The position numbers were made by a program, and so were the translations under genes. Under the pieces are notes generated by a model. That model was given only the letters and a program-made list of their open reading frames with translations. It was not told where the DNA came from and ran no database searches. A stretch of 64,000 bases of DNA, from the IMG/VR virus record IMGVR_UViG_3300025770_001492, positions 62,001-126,000 of that record; one strand, 5' to 3'. Of the stretch, positions 16,775 to 58,364 are shown one piece after another (the stretch's first letter is position 1; each line of letters opens with the position of its first letter).

Positions 16775-16776
16775 GG

Positions 16777-16911
16777 TCAGTCTTCCTTCCTGTGTGAAGC
16801 GTCCTTGAACAAGTCGCCAATTGAAGACCAAGATTGCGCAGGCGATACCACATCAGACTTGCCACTTGTCTGATAACTCCCGCTATCTGCTGTGTAAACG
16901 AAATCAGCCAT
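16777..16911 (-). CDS. 44-aa ORF resembling the start and linker repeats of the downstream giant protein
   Basis: MADFVYTADSGSYQTSGKSDVVSPAQSWSSIGDLFKDASHRKED; not in the ORF track; same MADF start as the giant gene. Confidence 0.55.
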   Translation of the reverse strand: MADFVYTADSGSYQTSGKSDVVSPAQSWSSIGDLFKDASHRKED

Positions 16912-16915
16912 ATTT

Positions 16916-17575
16916 TTATTCACTAAGTTTATCTAAAATTTGACCAACCAAAGGATGACGAACTATGTTGTCATTCTTAAACCTGATTATTCCTATTCCT
17001 TTTAAAGTTTCCAAACGAGTCATCACATCGACCAATCCAGTTCTATTCCCAATGTCGCTTTGCATTGGGTCGCCTGTTATTATCAGCTTGCTATTTTCTC
17101 CAAATCTACTCATAAACAAGGTCAGTTGACCCTTGGTAGCATTTTGAGATTCATCAAAAATGCAAATCGAATCATCAAAAGTTCTTCCTCTCATGTACGC
17201 AATTGGAGCAACTTCTATGCATTTTTCTACTTCTTCTCTCTGCGGTCCTTGATAACCAACGAGCTTTCCTAGAACATCATAAAGAGGAGACATGTATGGA
17301 TCGACTTTCTCTTGAAAATCTCCAGGCAAAAATCCTAAATTTTCACCCGACTCAACAATCGGTCTTGTTAAAATTATTCTTTTACAATTTTTTTGAAGCA
17401 ATTCGCTAATTGCAAAAGCCATCGCTAGATGAGTCTTGCCCACTCCTGCGGGTCCTGTAAGAAACAACACGTCATGTTGCTGGAATGCTGCCCATGCTAA
17501 CTTTTGTGCCGTATTTTTAAATTCCATGTGGAATTTATTACTCGAAGAGGACTTTTGACGTTTCCTTGGTGCCAT
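16916..17575 (-). CDS. phoH: PhoH family ATPase
   Basis: GPAGVGKT Walker A, RGRTF and DESQN motifs; GGAG SD before ATG at 17575. Confidence 0.95.
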   Translation of the reverse strand: MAPRKRQKSSSSNKFHMEFKNTAQKLAWAAFQQHDVLFLTGPAGVGKTHLAMAFAISELLQKNCKRIILTRPIVESGENLGFLPGDFQEKVDPYMSPLYDVLGKLVGYQGPQREEVEKCIEVAPIAYMRGRTFDDSICIFDESQNATKGQLTLFMSRFGENSKLIITGDPMQSDIGNRTGLVDVMTRLETLKGIGIIRFKNDNIVRHPLVGQILDKLSE

Positions 17576-17624
17576 ATATGATACTCCAATACTAAAAAGG
17601 CTTGTACTGTATATATCAATCAAC

Positions 17625-17659
17625 AAAAAAGAAAAGCTCGCTTAAAAGCGAGCTTTTCT
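17625..17659 (-). terminator. intrinsic terminator
   Basis: 12-bp stem agaaaagctcgc/gcgagcttttct followed by a U-tract on the minus strand. Confidence 0.8.
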
Positions 17660-18579: not shown

Positions 18580-18669
18580 ATGTACCGGATCTCATTCAAA
18601 AGCTTCATACAAGAAAAGCGATTCTTGAAATGGAAACAACTTCTTCAGAAAAAGACCAGCTACGTCTGA
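18580..18669 (+). CDS. 29-aa ORF with capsid-targeting-like motif, -1 out of frame with the RNA ligase
   Basis: MYRISFKSFIQEKRFLKWKQLLQKKTSYV; a -1 shift at GAA-AAG (18613-18618) gives MYRISFKSFIQEKAILEMETT, continuous with the ligase. Confidence 0.5.
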   Translation: MYRISFKSFIQEKRFLKWKQLLQKKTSYV

Positions 18670-19868
18670 TTATAACGAAATTGGCACTGGGCGACTTCAA
18701 CTGGCTCAAGGAGAAAGACATTCTAGTCGGTGATAAAGGTTCATCATGGATCTTAAATTATGGAATGAAAGATAAAAACGAGTTCAATAGACTTGTTCGT
18801 GGAATGGTAGTAGAAAAACCACATGCAAATAATTTCTTTCATGGCGACGATCCGCTAAAAGAAATCAAAAGCTTTCCTTTCATCAGATTTTTCAATCAAG
18901 GAGAAAAAGAATCTGACGAAATCGACATGAACGATTCGGAAATGCTTGAAAAGCTAGATGGAACCATGGTTGGAGTGTTTTTCTCAACCTATGATCCATC
19001 TAGCCCACAATGGCACACGAGAAGAATGTTAAGTTCATACGAATCCGATATGAAAAATACAGTCAAAGGATTTCATGGAGGGAATTACAACCTTATGTAT
19101 GAGATTGGCAAGTATGTAAAGAAACTTAATTTCAACCGAGAAGACACAAGCCACACATACGTTTTTGAATTCATTCATGACGCATCAACCGTGTTGACAA
19201 AATACAAAGAGAGCCAATGGGGATTATATCTTTTAGCTGGAAGAAACGTTGAAACGCACAAAGAAGAAACAGAAAGCGAATTGGACAAAATCTCAAAAAG
19301 AATTGGTGCCAACCGCCCTCAGAGATGGGATGCCACAAGCGAAGAGGAAATTAAAAACATGATGCAAAAAGCTGCATCTGAGATCGAAGACTTTGAGGGC
19401 ATGGTTTTTCGTGATAAAAAAACAGGCAAAAGAGTGAAATTAAAAGATCCCAAGTATGTAGAAAAACATCACATGCTGGGAGACACATCTCTCAAAAGAC
19501 TGATCCCAAAAACAATAGAGGGAGAAGAAGATGAAGTAACTGCATACTTTCCTCACGTAAAAGAATTGGTAGACGATATAAAGGAAAGACATGCAAACAT
19601 CAAAAACAAAACTGTGGAAACTGTAAATCAGTTTCAGAAATACAAAAATCTTCCAAGAAAAGAACTATGGGAGAAGGTTTCAAATATAGACAATGCTTTC
19701 ATCAGAAGCATGGTAATGAAGCACGTTGAATGCGAAGATTTGGAATACGAGATAGAAAAAGAACTCAAAAGAATTGCTGTAGCAACTGTTGAAAAAGACA
19801 CTTATTTAGGAAAGCAGACATTCAGTTATGCTTCTCGAAAGTATTTAGACTTACTAGGACTCAAATAG
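18630..19868 (+). CDS. T4 Rnl1-like ATP-dependent RNA ligase
   Basis: Motif I EKLDGT, motif IIIa FEFI, motif IV EGMVF, motif V VKLK. Confidence 0.85.
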   Translation: METTSSEKDQLRLIITKLALGDFNWLKEKDILVGDKGSSWILNYGMKDKNEFNRLVRGMVVEKPHANNFFHGDDPLKEIKSFPFIRFFNQGEKESDEIDMNDSEMLEKLDGTMVGVFFSTYDPSSPQWHTRRMLSSYESDMKNTVKGFHGGNYNLMYEIGKYVKKLNFNREDTSHTYVFEFIHDASTVLTKYKESQWGLYLLAGRNVETHKEETESELDKISKRIGANRPQRWDATSEEEIKNMMQKAASEIEDFEGMVFRDKKTGKRVKLKDPKYVEKHHMLGDTSLKRLIPKTIEGEEDEVTAYFPHVKELVDDIKERHANIKNKTVETVNQFQKYKNLPRKELWEKVSNIDNAFIRSMVMKHVECEDLEYEIEKELKRIAVATVEKDTYLGKQTFSYASRKYLDLLGLK

Positions 19869-20626
19869 TGAACGAAATCATAATCAAGAATAAGCAGCAA
19901 ATAGATGGAATACGAATAAGCTGCAAACTTGCTGCTGAGACACTAGATTACATTGAGGAATTTGTAGTAGAAGGAATCACTACAGAAGAAATCAATAATA
20001 TTGCAGCTAAATTCATAAAAGATAATGGAGCTACCTCTGCTCCACTGAACTACAAAGGATTTCCAAAAGAAACATGTATTTCCATCAACGAAGTAATATG
20101 CCACGGCATTCCAGATCAAACCGTCCTCAAGAACGGAGACATTCTGAATATCGACATAACCACAATCCTAGACGGATTCTATGGGGACACGAGCAGAATG
20201 TTTGCAGTCGGAGAAATAAACGAAACTGCGAAGGAACTGGTTCAGACGACCAAAGAATGCCTCATGATGAGCATAGAGACAGTGAAGCCTCAAAGTATGC
20301 TGTCGGGTATCGCCAAAGTAATTACCCAACATGCTGAATCTAACGGATTTAGCGTTGTCAACGCATTTTGTGGTCATGGGGTAGGACTTGAATTTCACGA
20401 GCCTCCATTCGTGCAGCACGACTATAAATCTGTAAAAGACGGATTTCTAATCAGTCTGGAAGAAGGCATGATTTTCACAATTGAACCAATGCTGTGCGAA
20501 GGGGAACGCCAAGCAATGCTTTTAGAAGACAATTGGACGGCGATTACCACAGACAAAAAACTGTCTGCTCAATTTGAGCATACAGTTTTAGTGACTAAAG
20601 GTGGATACGAAATATTGACTAAGTGA
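19868..20626 (+). CDS. map: type I methionine aminopeptidase
   Basis: DIT, GDTSR, GHGVG..FHE, TIEP and QFEHT metal-ligand motifs. Confidence 0.96.
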   Translation: MNEIIIKNKQQIDGIRISCKLAAETLDYIEEFVVEGITTEEINNIAAKFIKDNGATSAPLNYKGFPKETCISINEVICHGIPDQTVLKNGDILNIDITTILDGFYGDTSRMFAVGEINETAKELVQTTKECLMMSIETVKPQSMLSGIAKVITQHAESNGFSVVNAFCGHGVGLEFHEPPFVQHDYKSVKDGFLISLEEGMIFTIEPMLCEGERQAMLLEDNWTAITTDKKLSAQFEHTVLVTKGGYEILTK

Positions 20627-24945: not shown

Positions 24946-25341
24946 TTATAAAGTGTAACTGAGGACGTTCGGTACTGTGTGTTGTATCGAAACATTCTCT
25001 GGAATTGAATTTATTTGAACATTTGAAAAATCATCTCCGTTCCTGTTAGTACCAGCAGAATGAGTTTCTCCGATTTGGATGTAATGATCTGTCTCTGAGT
25101 TTACAAAAGAAACATAGGGGTTGTCGATACTGTGTCTGTACCAATCCCGACTAGTGGCTTGTACACTTAGATTCGCACTATTGAGTTCCGCATTTTGCGA
25201 CTGAGCCAGATGTTTATTCTCATCTTTGTATTTTTGCACTATTGCATAGCAATTTGCAGTCATTTGCTCAAAGTAGCCTTCATATCCAGATTGATAAGCC
25301 TCTTCAAGCATAGATAGCAACTCTTGTTCTGAAATATTCAT
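24946..25341 (-). CDS. hypothetical protein
   Basis: 131-aa ORF overlapping the upstream stop. Confidence 0.6.
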   Translation of the reverse strand: MNISEQELLSMLEEAYQSGYEGYFEQMTANCYAIVQKYKDENKHLAQSQNAELNSANLSVQATSRDWYRHSIDNPYVSFVNSETDHYIQIGETHSAGTNRNGDDFSNVQINSIPENVSIQHTVPNVLSYTL

Positions 25342-26264
25342 TCGCTAACGGCTCTTCCTTTTAGTGTTTCCCAATCTTTTTCTGGTCTGACTCTTAGATT
25401 GGTTTCCCATGCAGCAGACATTGTTGAACAATCCACATCATTAGACTTACAAAGTTGCAAAATAGCGTTCAAATCCTTCGGGAAGCAACTTCCGCCAAAT
25501 CCATTTTTTCCATCCGGTCCCGGCACGCTCCAGTGAGAATTGCCAAGTCTTTCATCTTTCGTTGCATGTTTTGCCACTTCGTCATAATCGACATTGATAG
25601 CTTTACACAATTCAAAAAGTTCATTGGCAAATGAAACCTTAACAGCCAAGAAGCAATTAGTTGTATACTTCACAAGCTCTGCAACTGATGAAGATGTTTT
25701 AAATAGAGGGACTTCGGGAAATGAAGACTCAAAAACTTGACTAAGGATTTCCAAACTTTCTTCTGGTCCTCCTATGATGATCCTATTTTGATTTTTGAAA
25801 TCTTCTACTGCATTTCTCTCCGTGAGAAACTCTGGATTGAAGCAAATATTGTTTTTGAATTCTGAATTGAAACCATCAACTGTGCCAGGAGGCACAGTTG
25901 ATTTTATTACCACAGTTCTAACTTCTTCAGAAAGATCATCCAACATCTTTAAGGCACTTCTTAAAATGCTCAAATCGCATTCGCCACTTTTATTCATAGG
26001 CGTCGGCAAACACACAAATATAGGACCATCTGTTTGAGACAAAACAGATTTATAGCCTTCTTCACACGATAGAGTTTTATCCACTTGCTCTACAAACTGT
26101 ATGACTACATCTTCATGCTCTTCTGATCTTGGAACCCAATCAGGGATAAAAGACCTTTTAAAGCCTTTGGATATGTCATATGTGTTCACAGCAAAAGCGT
26201 GTTTGAAGCCCTCATACAAAGCACTTCCAACAAAGCCTTGTCCTATTATTCCTATGCTTTTCAT
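25338..26264 (-). CDS. UDP-glucose/GDP-mannose 6-dehydrogenase family (C-terminal domain absent)
   Basis: GIIGQGFVG, KSTVPPG, PEFL, KYTTNCFLAVKVSFANE and GFGGSCFPKD. Confidence 0.9.
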   Translation of the reverse strand: MKSIGIIGQGFVGSALYEGFKHAFAVNTYDISKGFKRSFIPDWVPRSEEHEDVVIQFVEQVDKTLSCEEGYKSVLSQTDGPIFVCLPTPMNKSGECDLSILRSALKMLDDLSEEVRTVVIKSTVPPGTVDGFNSEFKNNICFNPEFLTERNAVEDFKNQNRIIIGGPEESLEILSQVFESSFPEVPLFKTSSSVAELVKYTTNCFLAVKVSFANELFELCKAINVDYDEVAKHATKDERLGNSHWSVPGPDGKNGFGGSCFPKDLNAILQLCKSNDVDCSTMSAAWETNLRVRPEKDWETLKGRAVSE

Positions 26265-26271
26265 CAAAATA

Positions 26272-26475
26272 TTACCTTGGTTTATCCAAACAAACTGCAT
26301 CTACTTCATTTCTACCATACCACTTTTCTCTTCTCATTGTGGCAAGGTCAAAACTTGCAAGACAGTCAGACAAATATTCTGCCAGTATCCAATCAGGAGT
26401 ATTGGAGCCATTTTCCTTGCTGCAACAGTTTATTAAAGTTTCTAATTCTTCTCGAAAATTTTCTGGTGAACTCAT
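26272..26475 (-). CDS. hypothetical protein
   Basis: 67 aa, ENGSNTPDWILAEYL. Confidence 0.6.
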   Translation of the reverse strand: MSSPENFREELETLINCCSKENGSNTPDWILAEYLSDCLASFDLATMRREKWYGRNEVDAVCLDKPR

Positions 26476-26476
26476 T

Positions 26477-27964
26477 TTAATTACCTGTTTTCATACCTTG
26501 TGCCCAACTTATACCGTGTTCATAATTTGCAGTAACTGCCATTGTATGAGTTACCGCTTTATATGTGGCAGAAGCAGATGCTCCATATCCGCTCTTCTTC
26601 CAGCTTGAAAATGGAAGGTGGGATTCGGCAGCAATCGATCCGCCGTTTAAGTAGAGCATTCCAGTTGTACATTCTTGCTCAATTATTTTATGCTTTCTGT
26701 AGTCGTCTGTCACGATTCCCAAAGCAAGTCCGTAATCAGTGTCATTATAAATTCTGATTGCGTCATCTAAATCATCAAATGGGATCAATACAACATGTGG
26801 ACCAAAGACTTCGTTCTTTAAAAACTCTTTCTCGCCCCATTCACACTGATAAACAAAAGGTGTTAAAAAATATCCTTTTGGATGTGTGTTCTTAGTTGTG
26901 GAATCAGGAGATCCAGAAACTAGAACCTTGGCATCTTTGTCATCTCTCACCATTTGATTGAAAGACATAACTTTATCCATTTGTTCTTTGCTGATGATAG
27001 GTCCGTAAAAAGGAGCATCAGTTTCAAAGGGACAACCTGTACCAAGGGATGCAGCATGACTAGAGAAATCTCTGGAAAACTTATCAAAGATCGATCTTTG
27101 AACCAAAATCCTGCTCGAACTTACACATCGTTGTCCACTTAGCTTGAAAGCGGAGGCGATTGTTGCCTCTAATGCCAAATCATAATTTCCATCCTCAAAT
27201 ACAATTGTGGCGGACTTTGATCCACACTCCATGCTGCAAGTTTTTGTGAATGATTCTGCGCAGTGCTTTCTTATTTCCTGTCCTACTTCCGCAGAGCCAG
27301 TAAACAAGATGTGATCGACTTCCGATCTGACAAGGGCTTTTCCTGTTTCTCCAGCACCGTGTACCATGTTGTACACGCCTGGTGGGAAGCCTGCTTCGTC
27401 GTACAGCTTGGCGACCTTTTGTGCGATCATAGGTGTTAATTCTGATGGCTTATGCACCACCGTGTTGCCTTCCACAATTGCTGGAGCAGATGACCAAAAT
27501 GAACCAATCGCAAGAGGGAAATTCCAAGGACTGATGACTGCTATTACGCCTTTGGGTTTTCTTATTACTTTTGCATCTTTAGTTGACAGTTCAGATGCAA
27601 TCACTTCTCCATAAGGCTGACGACCAGCAGACGCTGCCACTTGACACATATGCAGGGCTTCAATTACTTCTGCATGTGACTCGTTTGTATTCTTTCCTGT
27701 TTCAAGAGAAATGGTTTTAACCAAGTCGTCATGATCTCTCTTTAGCAACTGAGCGAGCGTGTCGAAAAAGTCTGCTCGTTGGACTCTGCTTACTTTCTTC
27801 CAGCCATGTTGAACCGCACGAGCGACAGATACAGCTTCCTCAACCTCTTGTTTTGTGCTCTCTGGAAAACTTCCCAAACTATCTTCTGTAGCTGGGTTTA
27901 TGTTTTCAAAATCAGGGCGAGTTGGACAAAAATCGCCATTTACATAATTCATTCCTATAATCAT
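26477..27964 (-). CDS. NAD(P)-dependent aldehyde dehydrogenase
   Basis: PWNFP, KPSE, FTGS, ECGSKS, catalytic GQRC and EVFGP. Confidence 0.95.
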   Translation of the reverse strand: MIIGMNYVNGDFCPTRPDFENINPATEDSLGSFPESTKQEVEEAVSVARAVQHGWKKVSRVQRADFFDTLAQLLKRDHDDLVKTISLETGKNTNESHAEVIEALHMCQVAASAGRQPYGEVIASELSTKDAKVIRKPKGVIAVISPWNFPLAIGSFWSSAPAIVEGNTVVHKPSELTPMIAQKVAKLYDEAGFPPGVYNMVHGAGETGKALVRSEVDHILFTGSAEVGQEIRKHCAESFTKTCSMECGSKSATIVFEDGNYDLALEATIASAFKLSGQRCVSSSRILVQRSIFDKFSRDFSSHAASLGTGCPFETDAPFYGPIISKEQMDKVMSFNQMVRDDKDAKVLVSGSPDSTTKNTHPKGYFLTPFVYQCEWGEKEFLKNEVFGPHVVLIPFDDLDDAIRIYNDTDYGLALGIVTDDYRKHKIIEQECTTGMLYLNGGSIAAESHLPFSSWKKSGYGASASATYKAVTHTMAVTANYEHGISWAQGMKTGN

Positions 27965-27973
27965 CTATATTCC

Positions 27974-28324
27974 TCAACAACTAAAGCTAGACCCGCATCC
28001 ACAATTGGACTTTGCGTTTGGATTTGTAAACGCAAATCCACGCTTATTTATATCTTCATGAAAGTCTATCACTGTGCCATCCATATGAATGAGAGACTTT
28101 TTATCAATAACAACTTTCAAATCTTCTTCTTCCTTTAAAATGTAGTCATCTTCTGTGACCTCAGAATCATCTATGAACCCCAATTGATACTGGAATCCGC
28201 TGCACCCTCCTCCAACGACTCCTACTCGTAACACATTGACTTCAATTTCTTGATCTTTAATAGTTGATCTGACCTCTTTTAAAGCCTTTTCTGTGATTTC
28301 TACATTTATTTCTACATTTGCCAT
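27974..28324 (-). CDS. iscA: IscA/ErpA (HesB) A-type Fe-S carrier
   Basis: GGGCSGFQY and CGCGSSF; GGAG SD before ATG at 28324. Confidence 0.93.
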   Translation of the reverse strand: MANVEINVEITEKALKEVRSTIKDQEIEVNVLRVGVVGGGCSGFQYQLGFIDDSEVTEDDYILKEEEDLKVVIDKKSLIHMDGTVIDFHEDINKRGFAFTNPNAKSNCGCGSSFSC

Positions 28325-28326
28325 GA

Positions 28327-29409
28327 TTAGCTCCAATATGATACAAAATAACACTTACCAGATCTCTCTCCCAATATGACCGGAGAAATAATTTCATTCC
28401 TAATTAAGTAAGAACATGCTTCTTTTTCGCAAAGCGTCTTAAATTTATCGACACAAAGTTGTTTTTCAAAGTCTCCAAAAGTATACAAAACGAATAGATG
28501 GTCAAACAACGCTCTATTTCCCACCTTATCAAATTTTTCTATTTTATTTAGAATTTTTCCAACTTTAGAAGAAGCCTTCAATGCAGAAGGAATATTGAAA
28601 ACAGGGGAAGAAAAAACTTTTAGACTGTCATAATCCGAAAAATTATATCCATGCTGTTTTGCAAGAATTATTGAAGCATCGCCCATGTTCAAACGATTAA
28701 ATCCATAATATGATTCTTCTTTTGTGGCAACACTATCCATGATCATCTTTGAAAACTCATTGAGGCCATAAGCCTTTAGAGCGTTAGACTTTTCAGTAGC
28801 CAATTTAACTTCATCGTCAAATGAATCAACTCCATAACAATACTTAGAAAAATCGTCTGCCGTGCTCATCCATCTGTCTAAGTCGATGCATACACGACTA
28901 GACTCTTTTTTGTTTCTAAGCTTCTGTACTTCACTTTTGTCTTTTAACAACCGAATATACAGGGAAGGGTTAATCGAAGATTTTTTTAAATAAGAATTTA
29001 AATATTGCCTAGCAGACTTGTTAACATTATTTTGAATACCTGGGGTTTCTTTACTTGCGTAGTCTGATAAATCTATAAAGTCTAATAGGGATTTGAAGTT
29101 TGATGGGTTAAAAATGCCATTAAGCACATCAAAAATATCAGGATGCTCTACATTGCAGATGCTTAAAAAATCATACAAGCAAGATCCTTTCTTGCCAAAT
29201 ATATTAACAATCTTTTTTTTAGGATTGTTTAAAAATAAAGTTTTATATGACTTCAAATCCTTGAAAACACATTTTGAAAACTTGCTTCTTTTGTTTATGT
29301 TTTTATAAACAATGTTTATAACTTTATTTTTATCTTCAATCAAAGCGTCCATGTTGAAAGCAACTCTTGAATCGAATTCGCCTAAACCGACCTTAATGCT
29401 GGATTTCAT
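28327..29409 (-). CDS. hypothetical protein
   Basis: Long ORF between infC and iscA; start uncertain. Confidence 0.6.
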   Translation of the reverse strand: MKSSIKVGLGEFDSRVAFNMDALIEDKNKVINIVYKNINKRSKFSKCVFKDLKSYKTLFLNNPKKKIVNIFGKKGSCLYDFLSICNVEHPDIFDVLNGIFNPSNFKSLLDFIDLSDYASKETPGIQNNVNKSARQYLNSYLKKSSINPSLYIRLLKDKSEVQKLRNKKESSRVCIDLDRWMSTADDFSKYCYGVDSFDDEVKLATEKSNALKAYGLNEFSKMIMDSVATKEESYYGFNRLNMGDASIILAKQHGYNFSDYDSLKVFSSPVFNIPSALKASSKVGKILNKIEKFDKVGNRALFDHLFVLYTFGDFEKQLCVDKFKTLCEKEACSYLIRNEIISPVILGERSGKCYFVSYWS

Positions 29410-29424
29410 CGACTTATTCCCGAT

Positions 29425-29973
29425 TTATTGTTTCAATGGCTCTATTAAACAATTCAAATTATTTCCATTAAGTTTCGGCTTTGAGACCGCCAATCCAATA
29501 TCTTTTAAATCTTCTATAATTCCGTCTAAGACTTCGAATCCCTGTTCTTTATGTGCGTTCTCTCGTCGTCTGTATTGCAACCTAAATTGCACCTTGTTGC
29601 CTTGAGCCAAAAATTTTCTAGCTGCTTTGACCTTTGTGTCTATGTCGTGTTTGCCAATAGATGGCCTTAAGCGAATTTCTTTAGTTTGTGCAGTTTGAGA
29701 ATTTCTTTTTTGATTCTTCTCTTTAATAGACTTTTCATATTTATGTTTGCTGTAGTCCATTATTCGACAGACAGGAGGTCTAGAATTAGGAGAGATCTCC
29801 ACCAAATCTAGACCATCTTTTCTTGCCATGTACTGGGCGTCCTTTATGGGCTTGGTTCCCAAGTTTTTCCCATCTTTGTCTATAACTACAATTGGGGATA
29901 TTCTAATCCTTTCGTTTATTCTAACCTCGTAGTTTCCCGTGTCTCTGGAATTGTTATTTTTGTTGTTTTTCAT
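29425..29973 (-). CDS. infC: translation initiation factor IF-3
   Basis: RINERIR, LDLVEISP...PPVCRIMDYSKHKYE, KEIRLRPSIGKHD and KARKFL..G.KV; ATG start. Confidence 0.95.
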   Translation of the reverse strand: MKNNKNNNSRDTGNYEVRINERIRISPIVVIDKDGKNLGTKPIKDAQYMARKDGLDLVEISPNSRPPVCRIMDYSKHKYEKSIKEKNQKRNSQTAQTKEIRLRPSIGKHDIDTKVKAARKFLAQGNKVQFRLQYRRRENAHKEQGFEVLDGIIEDLKDIGLAVSKPKLNGNNLNCLIEPLKQ

Positions 29974-29981
29974 ATTTTTAT

Positions 29982-31613
29982 TTAGACTTTTTTCGCAAGC
30001 CCGCTTGTCATCCTCTCCAAAGCATTTGAAACATCATATGAGTCTAAGGAAACATTAATCAAAAACATTTCCTTAGCATTAAGGGCCTCGTCAACAACTG
30101 ACTCTAATTCAGATTCAGTCTCTACCATCGCCCCTTTACCTCCGCCAATTATATCAACAAACTTATGATAGTTCCAGTCAGGAATATCATTAAAATCCCC
30201 ATCCAATAAAAATCTTTCTGTGGTATAACCATGATTATTCAATATGAATATAATTGGATTTAATTTATTCGCAACAATAGTGCTTAACTCCGTGCAAGAC
30301 ATTTGAAAAGCACCATCGCCAACTATCACAATAGTCCTGCTATCGGGTCTGGCAAATCCTGCCCCCAACGCTCCCGGAATTGATGTGCCCATACTTGTGT
30401 AAAATGCAGAACCTAAAAAAGCATTTTTGTGATGCATTGTTAAATCTGCTGCCCCAAACAAACTGTCGCCTATGTCTGCAACGACCGACATATCTTTTGT
30501 CAGCAAAGAATCAATTTTATCAAACAACCTTTTGCTCGTAATCGGAGTACCCGCAAGCGGAGAGAAACTCTTATTAGATCGAGTATTCACCACAGAAGGC
30601 TTGTTTGAATGGGTAGGAATCGAAGCCTCATCAAAAAGTTTATTGCAAAAGTCTTCAAAATTTACAGAAGCATACATATGATTTTTAACTTTCAATCCTT
30701 GTATGCTGCAAGATACGGTATTCCTTTTTACAAATTTTGAAGGCATAAAGCTTAATGTCATATCAGTGAGCATCGCCCCAAACATAAGAAGACAATCAGA
30801 TCCCTCGACTGCTGCCTGCACTCCCTCTTGACTCGTGCTTCCAGCATATACGCCTAAATAAAGCGGATGAGTCTCGCCAATTACTGATTTGCTAAGAAGA
30901 GTTGTTGCAATTGGAATGTTCGCTTTTTCAGCAAACTTGACCAGTTTAGATCCAAGTCCAAATCTTGAAACCTCAATCCCTGCTAATATAACTGGATTTT
31001 TTGAATTATTTATCCAAGTTTCAACTTCTTCAAAAGACTCTTCTAAGTTTTGCAAATCTGTACTTGGAGAATCTGGAGTTCCCTGCTTGTAAACATCGTA
31101 ACCAATCGGCTTGTCCGCAACGTCTCTTGGAAGCTCAATATAGATGGGCTGCTTATAGTAGTGAAGGGCTTCAAAAGCTTTATCGATTTTGTATCCCGCT
31201 GTATTCGGGTCGTCTAGAACAACAGACTCACATGTGAAATTTTCAAAAACTTCTTTTTGACACTCGAATGAACGAACCATATGATGGAGCAAAACACCTT
31301 CGTCTCGCTCTTTCATTCCAGGCGAACCTGAAATGACAACTAAAGGAGACCTCTCAGCATAAGCACATTGAACTGCATTTATAAGTTTTGCTGCTCCAAC
31401 ATTATATGTGACACAAACGCAACCAATACCCTTTATTCTAGAATACGCATCTGCTGCAAATCCTGCGTGATTTTCGTCTGTAGTGTTGATCAAACTTATG
31501 TCTGAATTATTTAATTTTTTATAGAAATTAAGAACATAATCTCCAGGAACTCCAAAGACGTGTTCAATTCCAGAATTTTTCATTCTGTCGATTAAGAAAT
31601 CTGACACTAACAT
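29982..31613 (-). CDS. ThDP-dependent 2-keto-acid decarboxylase (pyruvate/indolepyruvate/phenylpyruvate decarboxylase family)
   Basis: FGVPGDY, DENHAGFAADAY, LLHH and the ThDP-binding GDGAFQM...NNHGY. Confidence 0.93.
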   Translation of the reverse strand: MLVSDFLIDRMKNSGIEHVFGVPGDYVLNFYKKLNNSDISLINTTDENHAGFAADAYSRIKGIGCVCVTYNVGAAKLINAVQCAYAERSPLVVISGSPGMKERDEGVLLHHMVRSFECQKEVFENFTCESVVLDDPNTAGYKIDKAFEALHYYKQPIYIELPRDVADKPIGYDVYKQGTPDSPSTDLQNLEESFEEVETWINNSKNPVILAGIEVSRFGLGSKLVKFAEKANIPIATTLLSKSVIGETHPLYLGVYAGSTSQEGVQAAVEGSDCLLMFGAMLTDMTLSFMPSKFVKRNTVSCSIQGLKVKNHMYASVNFEDFCNKLFDEASIPTHSNKPSVVNTRSNKSFSPLAGTPITSKRLFDKIDSLLTKDMSVVADIGDSLFGAADLTMHHKNAFLGSAFYTSMGTSIPGALGAGFARPDSRTIVIVGDGAFQMSCTELSTIVANKLNPIIFILNNHGYTTERFLLDGDFNDIPDWNYHKFVDIIGGGKGAMVETESELESVVDEALNAKEMFLINVSLDSYDVSNALERMTSGLAKKV

Positions 31614-31643
31614 AACCGCTCCTTGGGGAATGCGAGGTTTAAT

Positions 31644-31687
31644 TATTTATAAATTACAGAATAGCTCTCTGCCTGTCTTGGCGTCAA
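31644..31687 (-). promoter_or_regulatory. tandem sigma70-like and T4-late-like promoters of the decarboxylase gene
   Basis: TTGACG-N18-TATTCT (31658-31687), then a perfect TATAAATA (31644-31651), then AAGGAG. Confidence 0.5.
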
Positions 31688-31697
31688 TACCATTAAC

Positions 31698-32519
31698 CTA
31701 TTCCGTTGTAGGAGAAAAAGGAATGTGAATTAAAAACCCTTCGCCTGTCGTTGGAAATCTCCTAACCCATTCGACACCTGATCCTATGGTGCAGCCAAAA
31801 TCAGTAGGCGTAAGACTGCTAGGTGTGAAACTGGGGGTGACAGATGGGGCACTAGATGAAAGAAAGCTCACGCTCTCTTCCATTTTCAAAAGTTTAAATT
31901 CAAACCAATAACAACCAGGAAGACATGTGTTATTGGCGTTCCAATTATATACCAAAAGAGTTTCTAATAACTGGTCTTTTAAAGTTGTTCCGTCTTCCTG
32001 AGTTATGTCTCCCAAAACCAACTCTATAACAGCAGACGCATCCAAAACCCTAAATATCCTCATCGAAGATCCTTTCTTCCATGAAGACTCATTGGTTCCA
32101 TTATATCCTCTCTGAACTTGAATTAACTTATTTGTTTCATCAAATCCAGTCACAAGCATATGCTCAGGAAGTCTAACTCTATCCATGATGATGATGTCGC
32201 CAACCATCACCTGTTCAAACCCAATGTCGTCTGCCAACCTAAAGTAGGTATCAGATGTGTCAATGCTCGTCTTTAACTTAGCAATAGCCCACATGTTTGC
32301 CTCTAACACCAAAGACGTGTCTAGTTCCCCAGTGTCTGGGTCTGTCAAGTCTAAAGGACCATCACAATCATCAGCAGCCAGTCTAAATGGCGGCTTAACA
32401 TCGTGCCTTCTAATGGTAAAATCAGGACAAACATTGGACGGACATCCAAATTTATCTAAACAGTTGGAGTTTGTCGTGAGATCACACGAAACTCCTATTC
32501 TCGCTCCTTGAATACTCAT
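31698..32519 (-). CDS. probable virion structural protein (BppU-like baseplate-type N-terminus)
   Basis: FTIRRHD..P...D..GPLDLT and Y.W....T..PG.YWFEF pattern; TATATA-N5-ATG at 32519. Confidence 0.45.
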   Translation of the reverse strand: MSIQGARIGVSCDLTTNSNCLDKFGCPSNVCPDFTIRRHDVKPPFRLAADDCDGPLDLTDPDTGELDTSLVLEANMWAIAKLKTSIDTSDTYFRLADDIGFEQVMVGDIIIMDRVRLPEHMLVTGFDETNKLIQVQRGYNGTNESSWKKGSSMRIFRVLDASAVIELVLGDITQEDGTTLKDQLLETLLVYNWNANNTCLPGCYWFEFKLLKMEESVSFLSSSAPSVTPSFTPSSLTPTDFGCTIGSGVEWVRRFPTTGEGFLIHIPFSPTTE

Positions 32520-32538
32520 ACAACTATATATGGAATAT

Positions 32539-33069
32539 TTATTCAAAAACTCCCAACAACTCCATCTGGGAAACTCTATCTCTGATCCAATTTAAATTTC
32601 CTTCAAATTCTTGAAGGGTTACATTGCCTTTTTTTGCAATCTCTTGTACTTTTTGGATAGAATCAGCACTGTTTAAAGAAGATTTTGAATCTTTAGATTT
32701 ATATGGAAAAAAAATAACTTTATCAATTTTATTTTTAACAATTTTGAGCATGCATTTTTTACACGGCCTAGCAGTAACATAAAGAGTAGAACCATCTAAA
32801 GTTTGAAAGCCCAGTCTGCTAAAATCTATTGCATTTTCTTCAGCATGTTCCACGTAGTCATATTTGTGAGGTCGTTCCCAATTTATATCTTCGTCCTTTA
32901 TCGAAGATGGTGGGCCGTTGTATCCCCAACCCAGTGGACGATTCGAAGAATCTATAATAAAAGCCCCAACCTGTGTATCAGGGTCTTTCGAAAAAGACGC
33001 TGCCCACAGTGCCATGGCCATATATCTTTCATCACGACTAGGTACTGCTCTAGGCTTTTTCATTGTCAT
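32539..33069 (-). CDS. dCMP deaminase
   Basis: SKDPDTQVGA, GYNG, HAEENAI and PCKKC. Confidence 0.93.
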   Translation of the reverse strand: MTMKKPRAVPSRDERYMAMALWAASFSKDPDTQVGAFIIDSSNRPLGWGYNGPPSSIKDEDINWERPHKYDYVEHAEENAIDFSRLGFQTLDGSTLYVTARPCKKCMLKIVKNKIDKVIFFPYKSKDSKSSLNSADSIQKVQEIAKKGNVTLQEFEGNLNWIRDRVSQMELLGVFE

Positions 33070-40441: not shown

Positions 40442-41611
40442 TTATTTTTTCATCTGCCTTAGAATTCTATTTCTTTCTTTTTCATTATACAAATCCCAAG
40501 TCTTAACCTTGGTGGCTTCATCATCGTCTTCATCTATCCCGCCACCGCCCATGCCGTAGAGGTATGCTCCCTTACCAAGTTTCCCTCCACCATTCCCTTT
40601 TTTCGCCTCTCCCAAGTCTTTACAAAGTTTAGGAACAGACACGGTAGAAGAAGAACTGCGAACTGAGCCTTCAATCCTGTCCCCATCAACCATTGCAAAG
40701 CTTATAGCGGTGGTCACCCCTTCCCATGTAACCATGTCATCAGACATGTCTGCGATCATATCTCTATGCCTAGAAGGAATTATCCCCATGCCCACAACGG
40801 CCACTCCCTCATTGATATACGCTTTCTTAGTAGCCTCTGCTTTTGAATCAACCCAAAACTTTGGACGTTCAAAATTAACTATAGACTTCAAAGCAGACGG
40901 ATGCCTGTATTCAAACAACCCTGACCACGCTTTGAATTCATACTCGGTTGCGTCATCAGCCATCAAGTTTTCAGTATCTGTGCTTATCCCAACCATCAAG
41001 GCAGTAGCCAACTTAGAGTCAATGTCATTATCTGGATCAAATTTTAGACCCGTTTTTTCTATCAAATCATAGACGGTAGCCGAACAACTTCCTGCTTTCA
41101 AATTAATCCATAGACCTTGAAAACTAGCAGAAGGATTTTCCCTATGGTGATCAACTACAATGTCAAATGTGACTTCATCACACAATCCCGCATTAACTGG
41201 GACTGTATCGCACAAAATATGGATACTATAGGGAGACTCTTTATGTATTTGGGCGTATTCGTCAACCCTTCTTAGATTGGGATCAAGAAGGTTGACCATC
41301 GCAACATTTTGCGGATGAGAAACTTCTCCAGAATAGAACAAATCACTTTCAATTCCATAAGACTTTTCTAACAACCACTGCATCCCCATCATGGAGCCGA
41401 TAGCATCTGGATCTGGACACCTATGAGTGAATATCGCAGCCTTGTTGCAAGACTCTGAATTGTTGCGATTTTCAAAGCCTGTAGCCTCGCTGAAAAAGGA
41501 TTTAAACTTTGTGAAGTACGTTGCCCTTTTACCAGAAGCAGGCTTTTTTTTAGAAGTTTTTTCTTGAGAAGATTCTTCAACATCCTTAGCCTTGGAAGAA
41601 GCGGTGTTCAT
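40442..41611 (-). CDS. DHH/DHHA1 phosphoesterase (NrnA/GdpP-like)
   Basis: HRCPDPDAIGS, LCD, VVDHH, GISTDT and GGG motifs; ATG at 41611 directly after the upstream stop. Confidence 0.9.
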   Translation of the reverse strand: MNTASSKAKDVEESSQEKTSKKKPASGKRATYFTKFKSFFSEATGFENRNNSESCNKAAIFTHRCPDPDAIGSMMGMQWLLEKSYGIESDLFYSGEVSHPQNVAMVNLLDPNLRRVDEYAQIHKESPYSIHILCDTVPVNAGLCDEVTFDIVVDHHRENPSASFQGLWINLKAGSCSATVYDLIEKTGLKFDPDNDIDSKLATALMVGISTDTENLMADDATEYEFKAWSGLFEYRHPSALKSIVNFERPKFWVDSKAEATKKAYINEGVAVVGMGIIPSRHRDMIADMSDDMVTWEGVTTAISFAMVDGDRIEGSVRSSSSTVSVPKLCKDLGEAKKGNGGGKLGKGAYLYGMGGGGIDEDDDEATKVKTWDLYNEKERNRILRQMKK

Positions 41612-41612
41612 C

Positions 41613-42026
41613 TTATACCTTAAAAACGAGTCCTTTGTTCCTGAGAAAAGTAACGATACTAATATCTTTTCCCATGTCATCTGTGACACGAATGTCAACG
41701 ATCCAAAACGAGTCTTTTTTTTCCTTCAAAACACAACGAGGATTTGTGCTAGAATTGAACAACTTGATCAATTCATCCTTTGCCTTGTAAGAAGATGTAA
41801 CTTCTAGAAAGGCCCAAACTTTCCTTCCGTCTTCAAGAACCAATTCAAACTCGTGACCAGAATTAACCCTTACTTGATTTATTCCAAAAACTCCAAAAGA
41901 ATCAACAATTCCAGATGTGGAATTGTTTGAAAATGGAGACTTTATACTACACATGACAACAAAGTTTGACAAAAGCAAAACAATCAAAATAAGCTTTAGC
42001 AAAGTATTTTTATTCATTTTAACCAC
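41613..42026 (-). CDS. membrane-anchored protein, weak thermonuclease (SNase)-like pattern
   Basis: N-terminal TM; OB-like strands and a C-terminal FLRNKGL helix; catalytic residues not evident. Confidence 0.35.
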   Translation of the reverse strand: MVKMNKNTLLKLILIVLLLSNFVVMCSIKSPFSNNSTSGIVDSFGVFGINQVRVNSGHEFELVLEDGRKVWAFLEVTSSYKAKDELIKLFNSSTNPRCVLKEKKDSFWIVDIRVTDDMGKDISIVTFLRNKGLVFKV

Positions 42027-49577: not shown

Positions 49578-49581
49578 TCAG

Positions 49582-49937
49582 TGGACCGGACGGGAGTCGA
49601 ACCCGTGTGTTGCGCTACCTATTCAAAAGCGTCTACCTGTATAGTTTGATGTTTGAGTTTCGCATCATTAAACCACAACAAACAAAGGTTTAAATCAACT
49701 ATCAAACAACGAGTCTTAGTTCAAAAGTAGTTTGATTTGCTTTGAACGCATCCAGTATTGCGGCAAGTTGTCAAACGTCACTGGCAGACCTTTGAAACTT
49801 GGGCTACTTATAATTAAGCAGCCATAGCGAAATTAGTTTTGTCAACTAAATTTTTAATCGGATTTTTAAGGAGCCTTCCGATCAACTCCTACAGGCAACT
49901 CAAGAACTCAACAGCCAATCGATACCATTTCCAGCCC
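49582..49937 (-). ncRNA. ssrA: tmRNA, tag (A)DKTNFAMAA
   Basis: Acceptor stem GGGCTGG/CCGGTCC-A with G3.U70; T arm ACGGG-TTCGACT-CCCGT; tag frame 49843-49814 GAC AAA ACT AAT TTC GCT ATG GCT GCT TAA after TTTAGTT; CCA not encoded. Confidence 0.95.
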
Positions 49938-53640: not shown

Positions 53641-53863
53641 CACAAACTCCACAGTTTCTTGTGGTGTAGACTATATCATCACCCCGAAGGGTGTCGGACG
53701 CTCTGGCCTGTAATTAAGAGGACTGAACCTCTCAGGTAGTCGTTGCACGTTCCAAAAGTGTACTTCTGGCTTCGCTCAGGATTGCCCTCGACTTTACGTT
53801 AGGGTTTCCCTGAATTCATCCGATTTGCATGCAAGATTTCTCTCACATGGCCCCAGTTAGTTA
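53641..53863 (-). ncRNA. group I self-splicing intron, 223 nt, no endonuclease ORF
   Basis: P1 GCCU|UA..UGGGGC with U.G at the 5' splice site; P2 with GAAA loop; P3 UCGGAUG/CGUCCGA; P4 UUCAGG/CCUGAG; P7 GACUA/UAGUC; P8 with UUCG loop; P9; terminal omega-G. Removal restores HTDFSLLDGY. Confidence 0.93.
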
Positions 53864-57051: not shown

Positions 57052-57056
57052 ATTTT

Positions 57057-58289: not shown

Positions 58290-58310
58290 TACTGAACCCT
58301 TTAGTAGTCT

Positions 58311-58351
58311 AAAATAAAGAGCCACCCCCACAAAGAAGTGAAGAGTGGCTC
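58311..58351 (-). terminator. terminator-like hairpin between prkA and yeaH
   Basis: GAGCCACTCTTCAC-TTCTTT-GTGGGGGTGGCTC followed by TTTATTTT. Confidence 0.55.
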
Positions 58352-58364
58352 ATCCTCTTTATAT

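What the first reader, a model, noticed from the sequence alone, without database searches (positions are those of the whole stretch)
26477..31613. 2-keto-acid decarboxylase plus aldehyde dehydrogenase: an Ehrlich-type or PDH-bypass pathway in a phage
Seen: both enzymes are full length with intact catalytic motifs and lie 2 kb apart on one strand with iscA and infC between them. The decarboxylase has both sigma70-like and TATAAATA promoter-like sites. Its DENHAGFAADAY...AYAERSPLVVISGSPG...LLHH region resembles, from memory, the Azospirillum phenylpyruvate/indolepyruvate decarboxylase type. Established: these two activities convert a 2-keto acid to aldehyde and then acid (pyruvate to acetate, indolepyruvate to IAA, phenylpyruvate to phenylacetate) and yield NAD(P)H. 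Inference: the phage redirects carbon or redox flux, or makes an aromatic signal molecule.
Basis: partly seen in the sequence, partly recalled or inferred. Interest (0 to 1): 0.6.

Follow-up and report, generated by a model that had tools for sequence, protein, structure and literature searches.

The report
Keto-acid decarboxylase and aldehyde dehydrogenase in marine huge phage
A half-megabase-class marine phage carries an intact 2-keto-acid decarboxylase and an aldehyde dehydrogenase that it inherited with its lineage, but relatives often keep one enzyme without the other, so the "two-step pathway" is plausible rather than proven.

Summary
On the minus strand lie a 543-aa TPP 2-keto-acid decarboxylase (KDC, 29982-31613) and a 495-aa aldehyde dehydrogenase (ALDH, 26477-27964). 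All catalytic residues are intact.

The window is part of a 245.5-kb IMG/VR virus fragment. It is collinear with the curated 595-kb huge phage LR756511.1, which has a large terminase; the fragment itself has none.

Both genes are native to the phage:
- Their GC3 matches the rest of the genome.
- The same gene order occurs in 18 non-redundant relatives.
- The stretch recurs near-identically in 20 marine metagenome runs from 16 studies.
- The phage KDCs form one clade, sister to a mostly Planctomycetota clade at 44-48% identity.

The link between the two enzymes is loose. ALDH is missing next to KDC in 8 of 18 relatives, and from the whole of a complete 572-kb genome. One lineage keeps ALDH beside a catalytically dead KDC. 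No related phage searched encodes a class I/II or IV aminotransferase or an Fe- or Zn-type alcohol dehydrogenase.

KDC falls below the cut-offs of both curated IPDC/PPDC families, so its substrate is unknown; the pocket is hydrophobic. I found no paper describing it. This is an auxiliary metabolic gene family not yet described in phages, of moderate interest.

The parts
29982..31613 (-). TPP-dependent 2-keto-acid decarboxylase (KDC), 543 aa, of the PDC/IPDC/KdcA family
   Evidence: It has the three Pfam TPP domains. TIGR03394 scores 347 bits, below its 554.5 cut-off. The best PDB matches are KivD/KdcA (E 1e-84) and AbPPDC (E 1e-77). Catalytic and TPP-binding residues are invariant or nearly so in 26 relatives. 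It sits in a single phage clade.
26477..27964 (-). Non-acylating aldehyde dehydrogenase (ALDH), 495 aa, subfamily unassigned
   Evidence: PF00171 scores 426.6 bits. Every NCBIfam subfamily model scores below its cut-off. PDB matches to several ALDH types all score about 240 bits. N148, E175, E246 and C280 are invariant in 25 relatives.
29425..29973 (-). Translation initiation factor IF-3 (infC), 8 bp downstream of KDC
   Evidence: PF05198 and PF00707 match. TIGR00168 scores 175.7 bits, over its cut-off of 60. It follows KDC in 17 of 18 non-redundant relatives.
28327..29409 (-). Unknown 360-aa protein, poorly conserved (21-44% identity among relatives)
   Evidence: No Pfam, NCBIfam or PHROG match. 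The Atlas gave no usable hit. It is present in most relatives.
27974..28354 (-). IscA/ErpA-like A-type iron-sulfur carrier, 126 aa
   Evidence: PF01521 scores 71 bits. TIGR00049 scores 115.8 bits, over its cut-off; the ErpA model scores 105, below its cut-off of 117.
31698..32546 (-). Conserved phage-specific 282-aa protein directly upstream of KDC: Cys-rich N-terminus, all-beta, with a variable insert; function unknown
   Evidence: A homolog lies directly upstream of KDC in 18 of 18 non-redundant phage loci. It is absent beside the cellular KDC homologs. The AF2 model has mean pLDDT 64.7 and is all-beta, with no PDB fold match. The Atlas places it in a viral hypothetical-protein cluster of 340 members.
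31614..31697 (-). 84-bp gap upstream of KDC holding a weak sigma-70-like site, TATAAATA and an AAGGAG ribosome-binding site
   Evidence: The sites are not above chance. In the relatives whose coordinates I checked (for example L047, L048, L054) the upstream gene ends about 1-20 bp before KDC.

Best explanation
The window belongs to a marine huge phage whose full genome is about 0.5-0.6 Mb. Within a core syntenic block, the lineage carries an auxiliary metabolic gene for a TPP-dependent, non-oxidative 2-keto-acid decarboxylase, acquired once and inherited vertically since. In this genome and roughly half of its relatives, a NAD(P)+-dependent non-acylating aldehyde dehydrogenase lies a few genes downstream.

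Proposed mechanism in the infected cell:
1. The host supplies 2-keto acids by its own transaminases or central metabolism. No class I/II or IV aminotransferase is encoded in the 8 related phage records searched.
2. KDC converts the 2-keto acid irreversibly into CO2 and an aldehyde.
3. Where ALDH is present, it oxidises the aldehyde to the carboxylate and yields NAD(P)H. Where it is absent, host enzymes must deal with the aldehyde.

The net effect would be an irreversible drain of 2-keto acids that gives reducing power and pulls host transamination forward. The pocket is hydrophobic and of middle size, which points to aliphatic, branched-chain or aromatic 2-keto acids rather than charged ones.

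Shown: enzyme family, intact catalytic sites, phage ownership, single origin, strong conservation, and patchy co-occurrence of the two genes.

Inferred: that both act on one pathway, the substrate class, and the benefit to the phage.
For: Identity and integrity of the enzymes.

Phage ownership:
- 113 of 311 proteins match LR756511.1 collinearly, at a median 43% identity.
- LR756511.1 has a terminase: PF03237 and PF17289 and phrog_2 at E 9.6e-42.
- GC3 is 0.318 for KDC and 0.343 for ALDH, against a genome mean of 0.335 +/- 0.054. Most cellular homologs lie in DNA of 0.5-0.69 GC.

Spread of the two families: more than 120 clusters at 90% identity for each enzyme, on contigs up to 693 kb.

Synteny: the order u282-KDC-infC...ALDH...DnaJ recurs in the relatives.

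Single origin: 39 phage rows form one clade (SH-aLRT 99), sister to 79 cellular rows.

Independent assemblies: the stretch is near-identical in 20 runs from 16 marine studies. One 18.4-kb contig spans it without a difference, and no joints were seen.

Likely co-transcription: gaps of 8, 15, -28 and 9 bp separate the genes from KDC to ALDH.

Co-divergence: identities of KDC and ALDH to the window's copies correlate across 9 loci (r = 0.82).

Precedent in cells: ALDH lies next to KDC in 3 of 79 cellular loci.

Pocket: M285, I381, L385, F386, T465, L469, M535 and L539 are hydrophobic and conserved in both the phage and the cellular clade.

Cofactor: ALDH has E175 at the KxxE position. From memory, this favours NAD+.
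Against: - ALDH is absent within 6-10 kb of KDC in 8 of 18 non-redundant relatives. It is absent from the whole of a complete 572-kb genome with terminal repeats; positive controls in the same search matched.
- One lineage (L062/L063) keeps ALDH beside a KDC that lacks D25, H110, the GDG motif and the segment holding E466.
- The block is a collinear core region holding unrelated functions (S21, peptide deformylase, dCMP deaminase, infC, IscA, DnaJ), so proximity is weak evidence of shared function.
- The ALDH matches no subfamily model, and its closest solved relatives act on semialdehydes and betaine aldehyde as much as on simple aldehydes.
- The genomes that hold the cellular KDC clade have no ALDH closer than 34% identity, so the two genes have different histories.
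- No RNA run holds the stretch, so there is no expression evidence.
- The substrate and the host are unknown.
Confidence: 0.5

Rival explanations
1. The two enzymes are functionally independent. KDC is the lineage's conserved metabolic gene and works alone, its aldehyde being handled by host enzymes. ALDH is a separate accessory gene acting on another aldehyde, for example a semialdehyde, or serving general aldehyde detoxification.
For: KDC occurs without ALDH in 8 of 18 relatives, including a complete genome. ALDH occurs with a dead KDC in L062/L063. The KDC pocket is identical in ALDH-plus and ALDH-minus phages. The best ALDH models are semialdehyde and betaine-aldehyde dehydrogenases. The closest cellular relatives of the two genes differ.
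Against: The genes are tightly packed in this genome. Their divergence is correlated. KDC-ALDH adjacency occurs occasionally in cells. No Fe- or Zn-type alcohol dehydrogenase is encoded in the related phages searched.
Confidence: 0.3
2. Pyruvate-specific PDH bypass: KDC is a pyruvate decarboxylase and ALDH an acetaldehyde dehydrogenase, making acetate plus NAD(P)H.
For: The catalytic D/E/HH/E set is shared with PDCs, and PDC structures match at E 1e-63 to 1e-68.
Against: PDCs score about 55 bits lower than KivD/KdcA and about 30 bits lower than AbPPDC. From memory of the PDC literature, the bulky residues that narrow the PDC pocket (Trp392 and Tyr290 of Zymomonas PDC) are Leu385 and Met285 here. 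The acetaldehyde dehydrogenase model ExaC scores 240 bits against a cut-off of 900.
Confidence: 0.12
3. Production of an aromatic signal molecule: indolepyruvate to IAA, or phenylpyruvate to phenylacetate.
For: TIGR03394, the indolepyruvate/phenylpyruvate decarboxylase family, is the best NCBIfam model. The pocket is hydrophobic. Five relatives carry an indoleamine 2,3-dioxygenase (IDO) gene 3-9 kb upstream of KDC, and all five are ALDH-plus.
Against: The score is far below the family cut-off, for the phage clade and the cellular sister clade alike. The phenylacetaldehyde dehydrogenase models StyD score 268-270 bits against cut-offs of 800-850. IDO is absent from this record and from both complete relatives. 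The habitat is seawater and the host is unknown. No benefit to a lytic phage is evident.
Confidence: 0.08
4. Host-derived contamination or chimeric misassembly; the genes are not the phage's.
For: The genes look cellular, and the record has no terminase or capsid match.
Against: The same gene order is found in 18 non-redundant phage loci. The whole record is collinear with a curated complete phage. GC3 is typical of the genome. The stretch was assembled independently in 16 studies with no joints. The phage copies form their own clade, only 44-48% identical to any cellular copy.
Confidence: 0.01
5. Phosphonate branch: phosphonopyruvate decarboxylase plus phosphonoacetaldehyde dehydrogenase.
For: The chemistry is analogous: a TPP decarboxylase followed by an ALDH (PMC8942020).
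Against: PEP mutase (PF13714) is absent from this record, LR756511.1, the complete 572-kb relative and a fourth record. The control genomes matched. KDC has the three-domain PDC-type architecture and the HH motif.
Confidence: 0.01

Closest known systems
Lactococcus lactis branched-chain 2-keto-acid decarboxylases KivD/KdcA (PDB 9msa, 6vgs, 2vbf)
   Same: Best solved relatives (E 1e-83 to 1e-84, aligned end to end). They have the same three-domain architecture and the same catalytic Asp, Glu, His-His and Glu and GDG...NN TPP motif. The substrate pocket is hydrophobic.
   Different: The match is a remote homolog alignment (about 288 bits over 533 residues), not orthology. Pocket residues differ, in KivD numbering then the phage residue: Q377 to I, F381 to L, S/T286 to M, V461 to T, F542 to L. 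The assignment of these positions to the substrate pocket is from memory of the KdcA structure paper.
Azospirillum brasilense phenylpyruvate/indolepyruvate decarboxylase type (TIGR03394; PDB 2nxw)
   Same: It is the best-scoring curated family model (347 bits) and the fourth-best solved structure (E 1.4e-77).
   Different: The score is well under the 554.5-bit cut-off. The cellular sister clade also fails at 404-427 bits. The phage clade plus its sister clade therefore form an uncharacterised subfamily.
Uncharacterised cellular KDC clade, mostly Planctomycetota (also Verrucomicrobiota, Hydrogenedentota, Nitrososphaerota and methanogen MAGs)
   Same: These are the closest cellular sequences at 44-48% identity. 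They are sister to the phage clade, with nearly the same pocket residues.
   Different: They lie in higher-GC chromosomes (mostly 0.5-0.69), have no conserved neighbours (at most 6 of 79 loci share one), and lack the phage neighbours u282 and infC. ALDH is adjacent in only 3 of 79 loci.
Ehrlich pathway (transaminase, 2-keto-acid decarboxylase, alcohol or aldehyde dehydrogenase)
   Same: This genome encodes the decarboxylase step and an aldehyde-oxidising step.
   Different: No aminotransferase (PF00155, PF01063) and no alcohol dehydrogenase (PF00465, PF08240) is found in 8 related phage records. The ALDH step is missing in many relatives.
Auxiliary metabolic and translation genes of huge phages (Al-Shayeb et al. 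2020, PMC7162821; Mar_Mega_1, PMC9723777)
   Same: The setting is the same: a >200-kb phage with IF3, S21, peptide deformylase, tmRNA, DnaJ and nucleotide-metabolism genes. The closest deposited genome, LR756511.1, is from that study.
   Different: Neither paper's main text mentions a 2-keto-acid decarboxylase, and Al-Shayeb's does not mention an aldehyde dehydrogenase either. Apart from LR756511.1, no record in the phage collection matched KDC above 30% identity, and those listed are bacterial-type contigs or unannotated fragments.

Membership tests
TPP-dependent 2-keto-acid decarboxylase family (PDC/IPDC/PPDC/KdcA) | Three domains: TPP_enzyme_N, TPP_enzyme_M and TPP_enzyme_C | tested here: met
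   PF02776 at 99.6 bits, PF00205 at 87.4 bits and PF02775 at 94.7 bits, all over their cut-offs.
TPP-dependent 2-keto-acid decarboxylase family (PDC/IPDC/PPDC/KdcA) | Catalytic Asp, cofactor-activating Glu, His-His pair and second Glu, plus the GDG...NN Mg-TPP motif | tested here: met
   D25, E47, H110, H111, E466, G432-D433-G434 and N459/N460 align with KivD D26, E49, H112, H113 and E462. They are invariant or nearly so in 26 phage relatives and in 79 cellular ones.
TPP-dependent 2-keto-acid decarboxylase family (PDC/IPDC/PPDC/KdcA) | Decarboxylase activity on a 2-keto acid | not testable with these tools
   This needs an enzyme assay.
TIGR03394 indolepyruvate/phenylpyruvate decarboxylase (Azospirillum type, equivalog) | Score at or above the curated cut-off of 554.5 bits | tested here: not met
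   The window scores 347.1 bits. Phage relatives score 301-377 bits and cellular sister-clade members 404-427 bits.
TIGR03393 indolepyruvate decarboxylase (Enterobacter type, equivalog) | Score at or above the curated cut-off of 946 bits | tested here: not met
   299.7 bits.
Aldehyde dehydrogenase superfamily (PF00171), non-acylating | Nucleophile Cys, general-base Glu, oxyanion Asn and Rossmann GxxxxG/FTGS | tested here: met
   PF00171 scores 426.6 bits. C280, E246, N148 and G223-S224 are invariant in 25 relatives.
Specific ALDH subfamilies (HpaE, 2-hydroxymuconic semialdehyde DH, BADH, SSADH, StyD phenylacetaldehyde DH, ExaC acetaldehyde DH) | Score at or above each curated cut-off | tested here: not met
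   The best model is HpaE at 319 bits against 638. StyD scores 268-270 against 800-850, and ExaC 240 against 900.
Ehrlich-type pathway encoded by the phage | An aminotransferase that supplies the 2-keto acid | tested here: not met
   PF00155 and PF01063 gave no match in 8 related records, including two complete genomes. The control genomes matched.
Ehrlich-type pathway encoded by the phage | The decarboxylase and the aldehyde-converting enzyme always occur together | tested here: not met
   ALDH is present beside KDC in 10 of 18 non-redundant loci. No PF00171 match occurs anywhere in the complete 572-kb relative. The KDC of L062 is dead while its ALDH is kept.
Tailed huge phage (Caudoviricetes, >200 kb) | Large terminase or capsid genes on the same genome | tested here: inconclusive
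   This 245.5-kb fragment has none. It is collinear with positions 190-495 kb of LR756511.1, whose terminase lies at about 535-537 kb.
Phosphonate biosynthesis branch (Ppm-Ppd-PhnY) | PEP mutase in the genome | tested here: not met
   PF13714 is absent from 4 records, including two complete genomes.

The most novel reading that the evidence does not exclude
The phage KDCs and their mostly Planctomycetota sister clade form an uncharacterised subfamily of TPP decarboxylases with its own conserved pocket: M/I285, I/V381, D383, L385, F386, T465, M/L535 and L539. In huge phages it may serve as the irreversible step of a nitrogen-scavenging shunt. Decarboxylating the keto acids left by host transaminases would pull amino-acid nitrogen into glutamate for the very large nucleotide demand of a 0.5-Mb genome in nitrogen-poor seawater. 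ALDH, and IDO in some relatives, would be optional add-ons.
Probability: 0.15. Interest if true: 0.65.

Novelty: new member of a known kind. Interest (0 to 1): 0.45.

Why it matters
Huge phages are known for carrying translation and nucleotide-metabolism genes. A conserved carbon-skeleton enzyme inherited throughout a lineage would be a different kind of host take-over, and it can be tested directly with two soluble enzymes.

The family is large: more than 120 clusters at 90% identity, on contigs up to 693 kb, and this member recurs in marine metagenomes from 16 studies. Its activity could therefore matter for how infected marine bacteria process amino-acid carbon and nitrogen.

The result also warns against reading pathways from gene proximity inside strongly collinear phage genomes. 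The supposed partner gene is missing in nearly half of the relatives.

Tried and rejected
- Terminase and capsid in the record itself. PF03237, PF17289, PF05065 and PF04451 gave nothing, nor did tblastn with the LR756511.1 terminase. PHROG scans of 10 large proteins from outside the window found only replication and nucleotide-metabolism genes.
- A single-sequence scan of viral contigs found only an identical copy. A profile query was needed.
- The conserved upstream neighbour u282 as a candidate pathway enzyme. It has no Pfam or NCBIfam hit and only a faint PHROG tail-protein match (E 2.7e-4). The AF2 model is all-beta at pLDDT 64.7, Foldseek against the PDB gave nothing at E <= 0.001, and the Atlas gave only viral hypothetical clusters. 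Function left unknown.
- The 360-aa ORF gave nothing.
- Conserved neighbours of the cellular KDC clade, to infer a substrate: none is shared by more than 6 of 79 loci.
- Phosphonate pathway: no PEP mutase.
- Upstream or alternative partners: no aminotransferases and no Fe- or Zn-type alcohol dehydrogenases. A Glu/Leu/Phe/Val dehydrogenase occurs in one relative only, far from KDC.
- A common donor for ALDH and KDC: genomes with the cellular KDC have no ALDH above 34% identity.
- Host. The Al-Shayeb supplement gives no confident phylum for LR756511.1 (82% unknown; Proteobacteria 4%, Parcubacteria 2.3%, Planctomycetes 2.2%). I did not resolve it.
- Expression: no RNA run holds the stretch.
- Tree with characterised references. 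Only Acinetobacter and Staphylococcus IpdC-like genes, taken from mislabelled phage records, served as outgroup.
- Not run: the large representative-protein search (not needed for the claims made) and complex prediction (no binding is claimed).

Full report
**What is at the coordinates.** All genes of the finding lie on the minus strand. In order of transcription they are:
- an unknown 282-aa protein, u282 (31698-32546);
- an 84-bp gap;
- the decarboxylase KDC (29982-31613, 543 aa);
- infC (29425-29973);
- an IscA/ErpA-like carrier (27974-28354);
- the aldehyde dehydrogenase ALDH (26477-27964, 495 aa).

Gaps between the last five genes are 8, 15, -28 (an overlap) and 9 bp, so one transcript is likely.

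KDC has the three TPP-enzyme domains. Its best NCBIfam model is TIGR03394, indolepyruvate/phenylpyruvate decarboxylase, at 347 bits, below the 554.5-bit cut-off. Its best solved relatives are Lactococcus KivD/KdcA (E about 1e-84), then Azospirillum PPDC (1.4e-77), then IPDCs and PDCs.

ALDH matches PF00171 at 426.6 bits but reaches no subfamily cut-off. In the PDB it matches several ALDH types about equally well, near 240 bits.

**Integrity.** In the KivD alignment, KDC has D25, E47, H110-H111 and E466 at the catalytic positions and GDG432-434...N459/N460 for Mg-TPP. These are invariant or nearly so in an alignment of 26 relatives whose mean column identity is 72%. ALDH has the oxyanion Asn148, general base Glu246, nucleophile Cys280, K172/E175 and the FTGS and EVFGP motifs. 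All are invariant in 25 relatives. Both proteins are therefore under strong purifying selection as enzymes.

**Promoter-like sites.** Sigma-70-like matches are at the shuffled expectation, 37 against 36.4. TATAAATA is only mildly enriched, 9 against 3.85 expected. In the relatives whose coordinates I checked, the upstream gene ends about 1-20 bp before KDC, so this gap is not a conserved feature.

**Is it a phage, and are the genes its own?** The window is G000:C1:62001-126000 of a 245,522-bp IMG/VR virus record that CheckV rates 49% complete. Coding density is 91% under code 11. The record has six tRNAs and a tmRNA.

It has no terminase or capsid match. However, 113 of its 311 ORFs match LR756511.1 in the same order, at a median 43% identity, over positions 190-495 kb of that genome. 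LR756511.1 is SR-VP_PHAGE_COMPLETE_CIR-CU-CL_42_23, a curated complete 595,163-bp phage from Al-Shayeb et al. 2020. Its large terminase lies at about 535-537 kb, just beyond the part our fragment covers. LR756511.1 carries the same order u282-KDC-infC-unknown-IscA...ALDH, with KDC and ALDH each about 52% identical to the window's.

GC3 of KDC (0.318) and ALDH (0.343) is typical of the genome (0.335 +/- 0.054). Most cellular homologs sit in DNA of 0.5-0.69 GC.

The stretch 26477-31613 is near-identical in 20 sequencing runs from 16 marine or seawater studies. When contigs from four of these runs were laid on 26200-31900, one 18.4-kb contig crossed the whole stretch without a difference, contigs of 99% identity or more tiled it in three other runs, and there were no joints. 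Misassembly and host contamination are excluded as far as sequence can show.

**How widespread.** The word search returned more than 120 clusters at 90% identity for KDC (59-94% identical to the window's) and as many for ALDH (60-96%). They lie on contigs up to 693 kb. A profile scan of IMG/VR gave 16 loci. Three large assemblies were fetched by identity. One 546-kb contig filed under a Bacteriovoracaceae MAG is clearly another such phage.

In a tree of 120 sequences the 39 phage rows form one clade (SH-aLRT 99). They are sister to all 79 cellular rows (98) when rooted on Acinetobacter and Staphylococcus IpdC-like genes. The cellular rows are 44-48% identical to the window's KDC. They come mostly from Planctomycetota, including complete chromosomes, and also from Verrucomicrobiota, Hydrogenedentota, Nitrososphaerota and methanogen MAGs. 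Because only the 80 best loci were kept, the donor is not resolved. A single ancient acquisition followed by vertical descent is the simple reading.

**Are the two enzymes a pair?** I compared 18 non-redundant phage loci.
- A u282 homolog lies directly upstream of KDC in all 18, and infC directly downstream in 17.
- ALDH is present within the fetched flank in only 10.
- For five ALDH-minus loci the whole records were searched and have no ALDH. One is a complete 572,167-bp genome with terminal repeats. A PF00171 search with positive controls confirmed this.
- On the KDC tree, ALDH presence needs about 4 changes (3-5 over bootstraps), but the backbone is unresolved.
- The L062/L063 lineage keeps ALDH beside a 517-aa KDC that has D25P, H110N, SED in place of GDG, and a deletion of the GYTTE segment holding the second catalytic Glu. 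That KDC is probably dead.
- In favour of coupling: the tight packing here, the correlated divergence of the two proteins (r = 0.82 over 9 loci), and adjacency in 3 of 79 cellular loci.
- None of 8 related records, two of them complete, has a class I/II or class IV aminotransferase or an Fe- or Zn-type alcohol dehydrogenase. One has a Glu/Leu/Phe/Val dehydrogenase far from KDC.

The phage thus encodes at most the last two steps of an Ehrlich-type route and depends on host-made 2-keto acids.

**Substrate.** Neither the phage clade (301-377 bits) nor the cellular sister clade (404-427 bits) reaches the TIGR03394 cut-off. Cellular homologs have no conserved neighbours. By my recollection of the KdcA structure paper, the positions below line the substrate pocket. 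Here they are M285, I381, L385, F386, T465, L469, M535 and L539. They are nearly the same in ALDH-plus phages, ALDH-minus phages and the cellular clade. The pocket is hydrophobic and of middle size. It lacks the Trp and Tyr that, from memory, narrow the PDC pocket, and it has no charged residue to suggest 2-oxoglutarate or guanidino substrates. I take aliphatic, branched-chain or aromatic 2-keto acids as most likely, with low confidence. ALDH has Glu at the KxxE position, which from memory favours NAD+. A phosphonate reading is excluded because PEP mutase is absent.

**Verdict.** The pathway reading is plausible for this genome but not general to the lineage. KDC is the conserved element and ALDH an accessory.

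I found no paper describing a phage 2-keto-acid decarboxylase, although JGI's automatic annotation already names these genes. The finding is best filed as a not-yet-described auxiliary metabolic gene family of marine and other huge phages, of moderate interest. The host and the substrate are the open questions.

Noticed in passing
window 45030-47762 and 52260-53645 (minus strand), with the tmRNA at 49581-49937 between them: DNA polymerase III alpha (DnaE) is split into two ORFs. The PHP/N-terminal part is 461 aa and the rest 910 aa. They are separated by about 4.5 kb that holds a tmRNA (tag DKTNFAMAA) and small ORFs. In LR756511.1 both parts match a single 1179-aa ORF.
   Followed up: partly
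window 55459-60479 (minus strand): A PrkA (704 aa), DUF444/YeaH (424 aa) and SpoVR/YcgB (530 aa) gene triad is conserved at 54-66% identity in LR756511.1. It is an unusual stress-kinase module for a phage.
   Followed up: no
L047:5965-7071; also L050, L052, L056 and L057 (records G006, G007, G009, G010): Five related huge phages carry an indoleamine 2,3-dioxygenase (PF01231) gene 3-9 kb upstream of KDC. All five also have ALDH. None of the 8 ALDH-minus loci has it, and it is absent from this record and from both complete relatives.
   Followed up: partly
L062 and L063 (IMGVR_UViG_3300010334_006851 and 3300027747_004524), KDC at 10001-11524: The KDC homolog is an open 517-aa ORF but has lost D25, H110, the GDG motif and the GYTTE segment. 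It is probably a pseudoenzyme, while the neighbouring ALDH is intact.
   Followed up: partly
window 31698-32546 (minus strand): A Cys-rich, all-beta 282-aa protein always lies directly upstream of KDC in the phages. It carries a variable insert of up to about 150 aa with repeated G-x-W-x-G...Y-T-G-like units in some relatives. No fold or family match was found.
   Followed up: yes
window 9482-16831 (minus strand): A 2449-aa protein whose only recognisable parts are two Laminin_G_3 (concanavalin A-like) stretches. It has no PHROG match.
   Followed up: no
window 25338-26300 (minus strand): A UDP-glucose/GDP-mannose dehydrogenase-like gene has the N-terminal and central domains only (320 aa). 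The overlapping next ORF (24946-25341) has no Pfam match. The gene follows ALDH in several relatives.
   Followed up: no
L065 (CALFYV010000090.1, 546,147-bp contig) and protein P0112: A 546-kb contig filed in a Bacteriovoracaceae MAG has the phage gene order dCMP deaminase-u282-KDC-infC-IscA-DnaJ at 36% GC, so it is a misbinned huge phage. A KDC named as Candidatus Thorarchaeota also falls inside the phage clade.
   Followed up: partly
window 18630-19868 (plus strand) and 16916-17626, 19868-20626, 40442-41698: Other accessory genes in the window: an RNA ligase/tail-fibre attachment catalyst (phrog_562), PhoH, a methionine aminopeptidase (M24) and a DHH phosphoesterase.
   Followed up: no
window, 9 sites (for example 31644, 34913, 35354): TATAAATA occurs 9 times against 3.85 expected, and 8 of the 9 are on the coding (minus) strand. 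Several lie inside genes, so a promoter role is unproven.
   Followed up: partly
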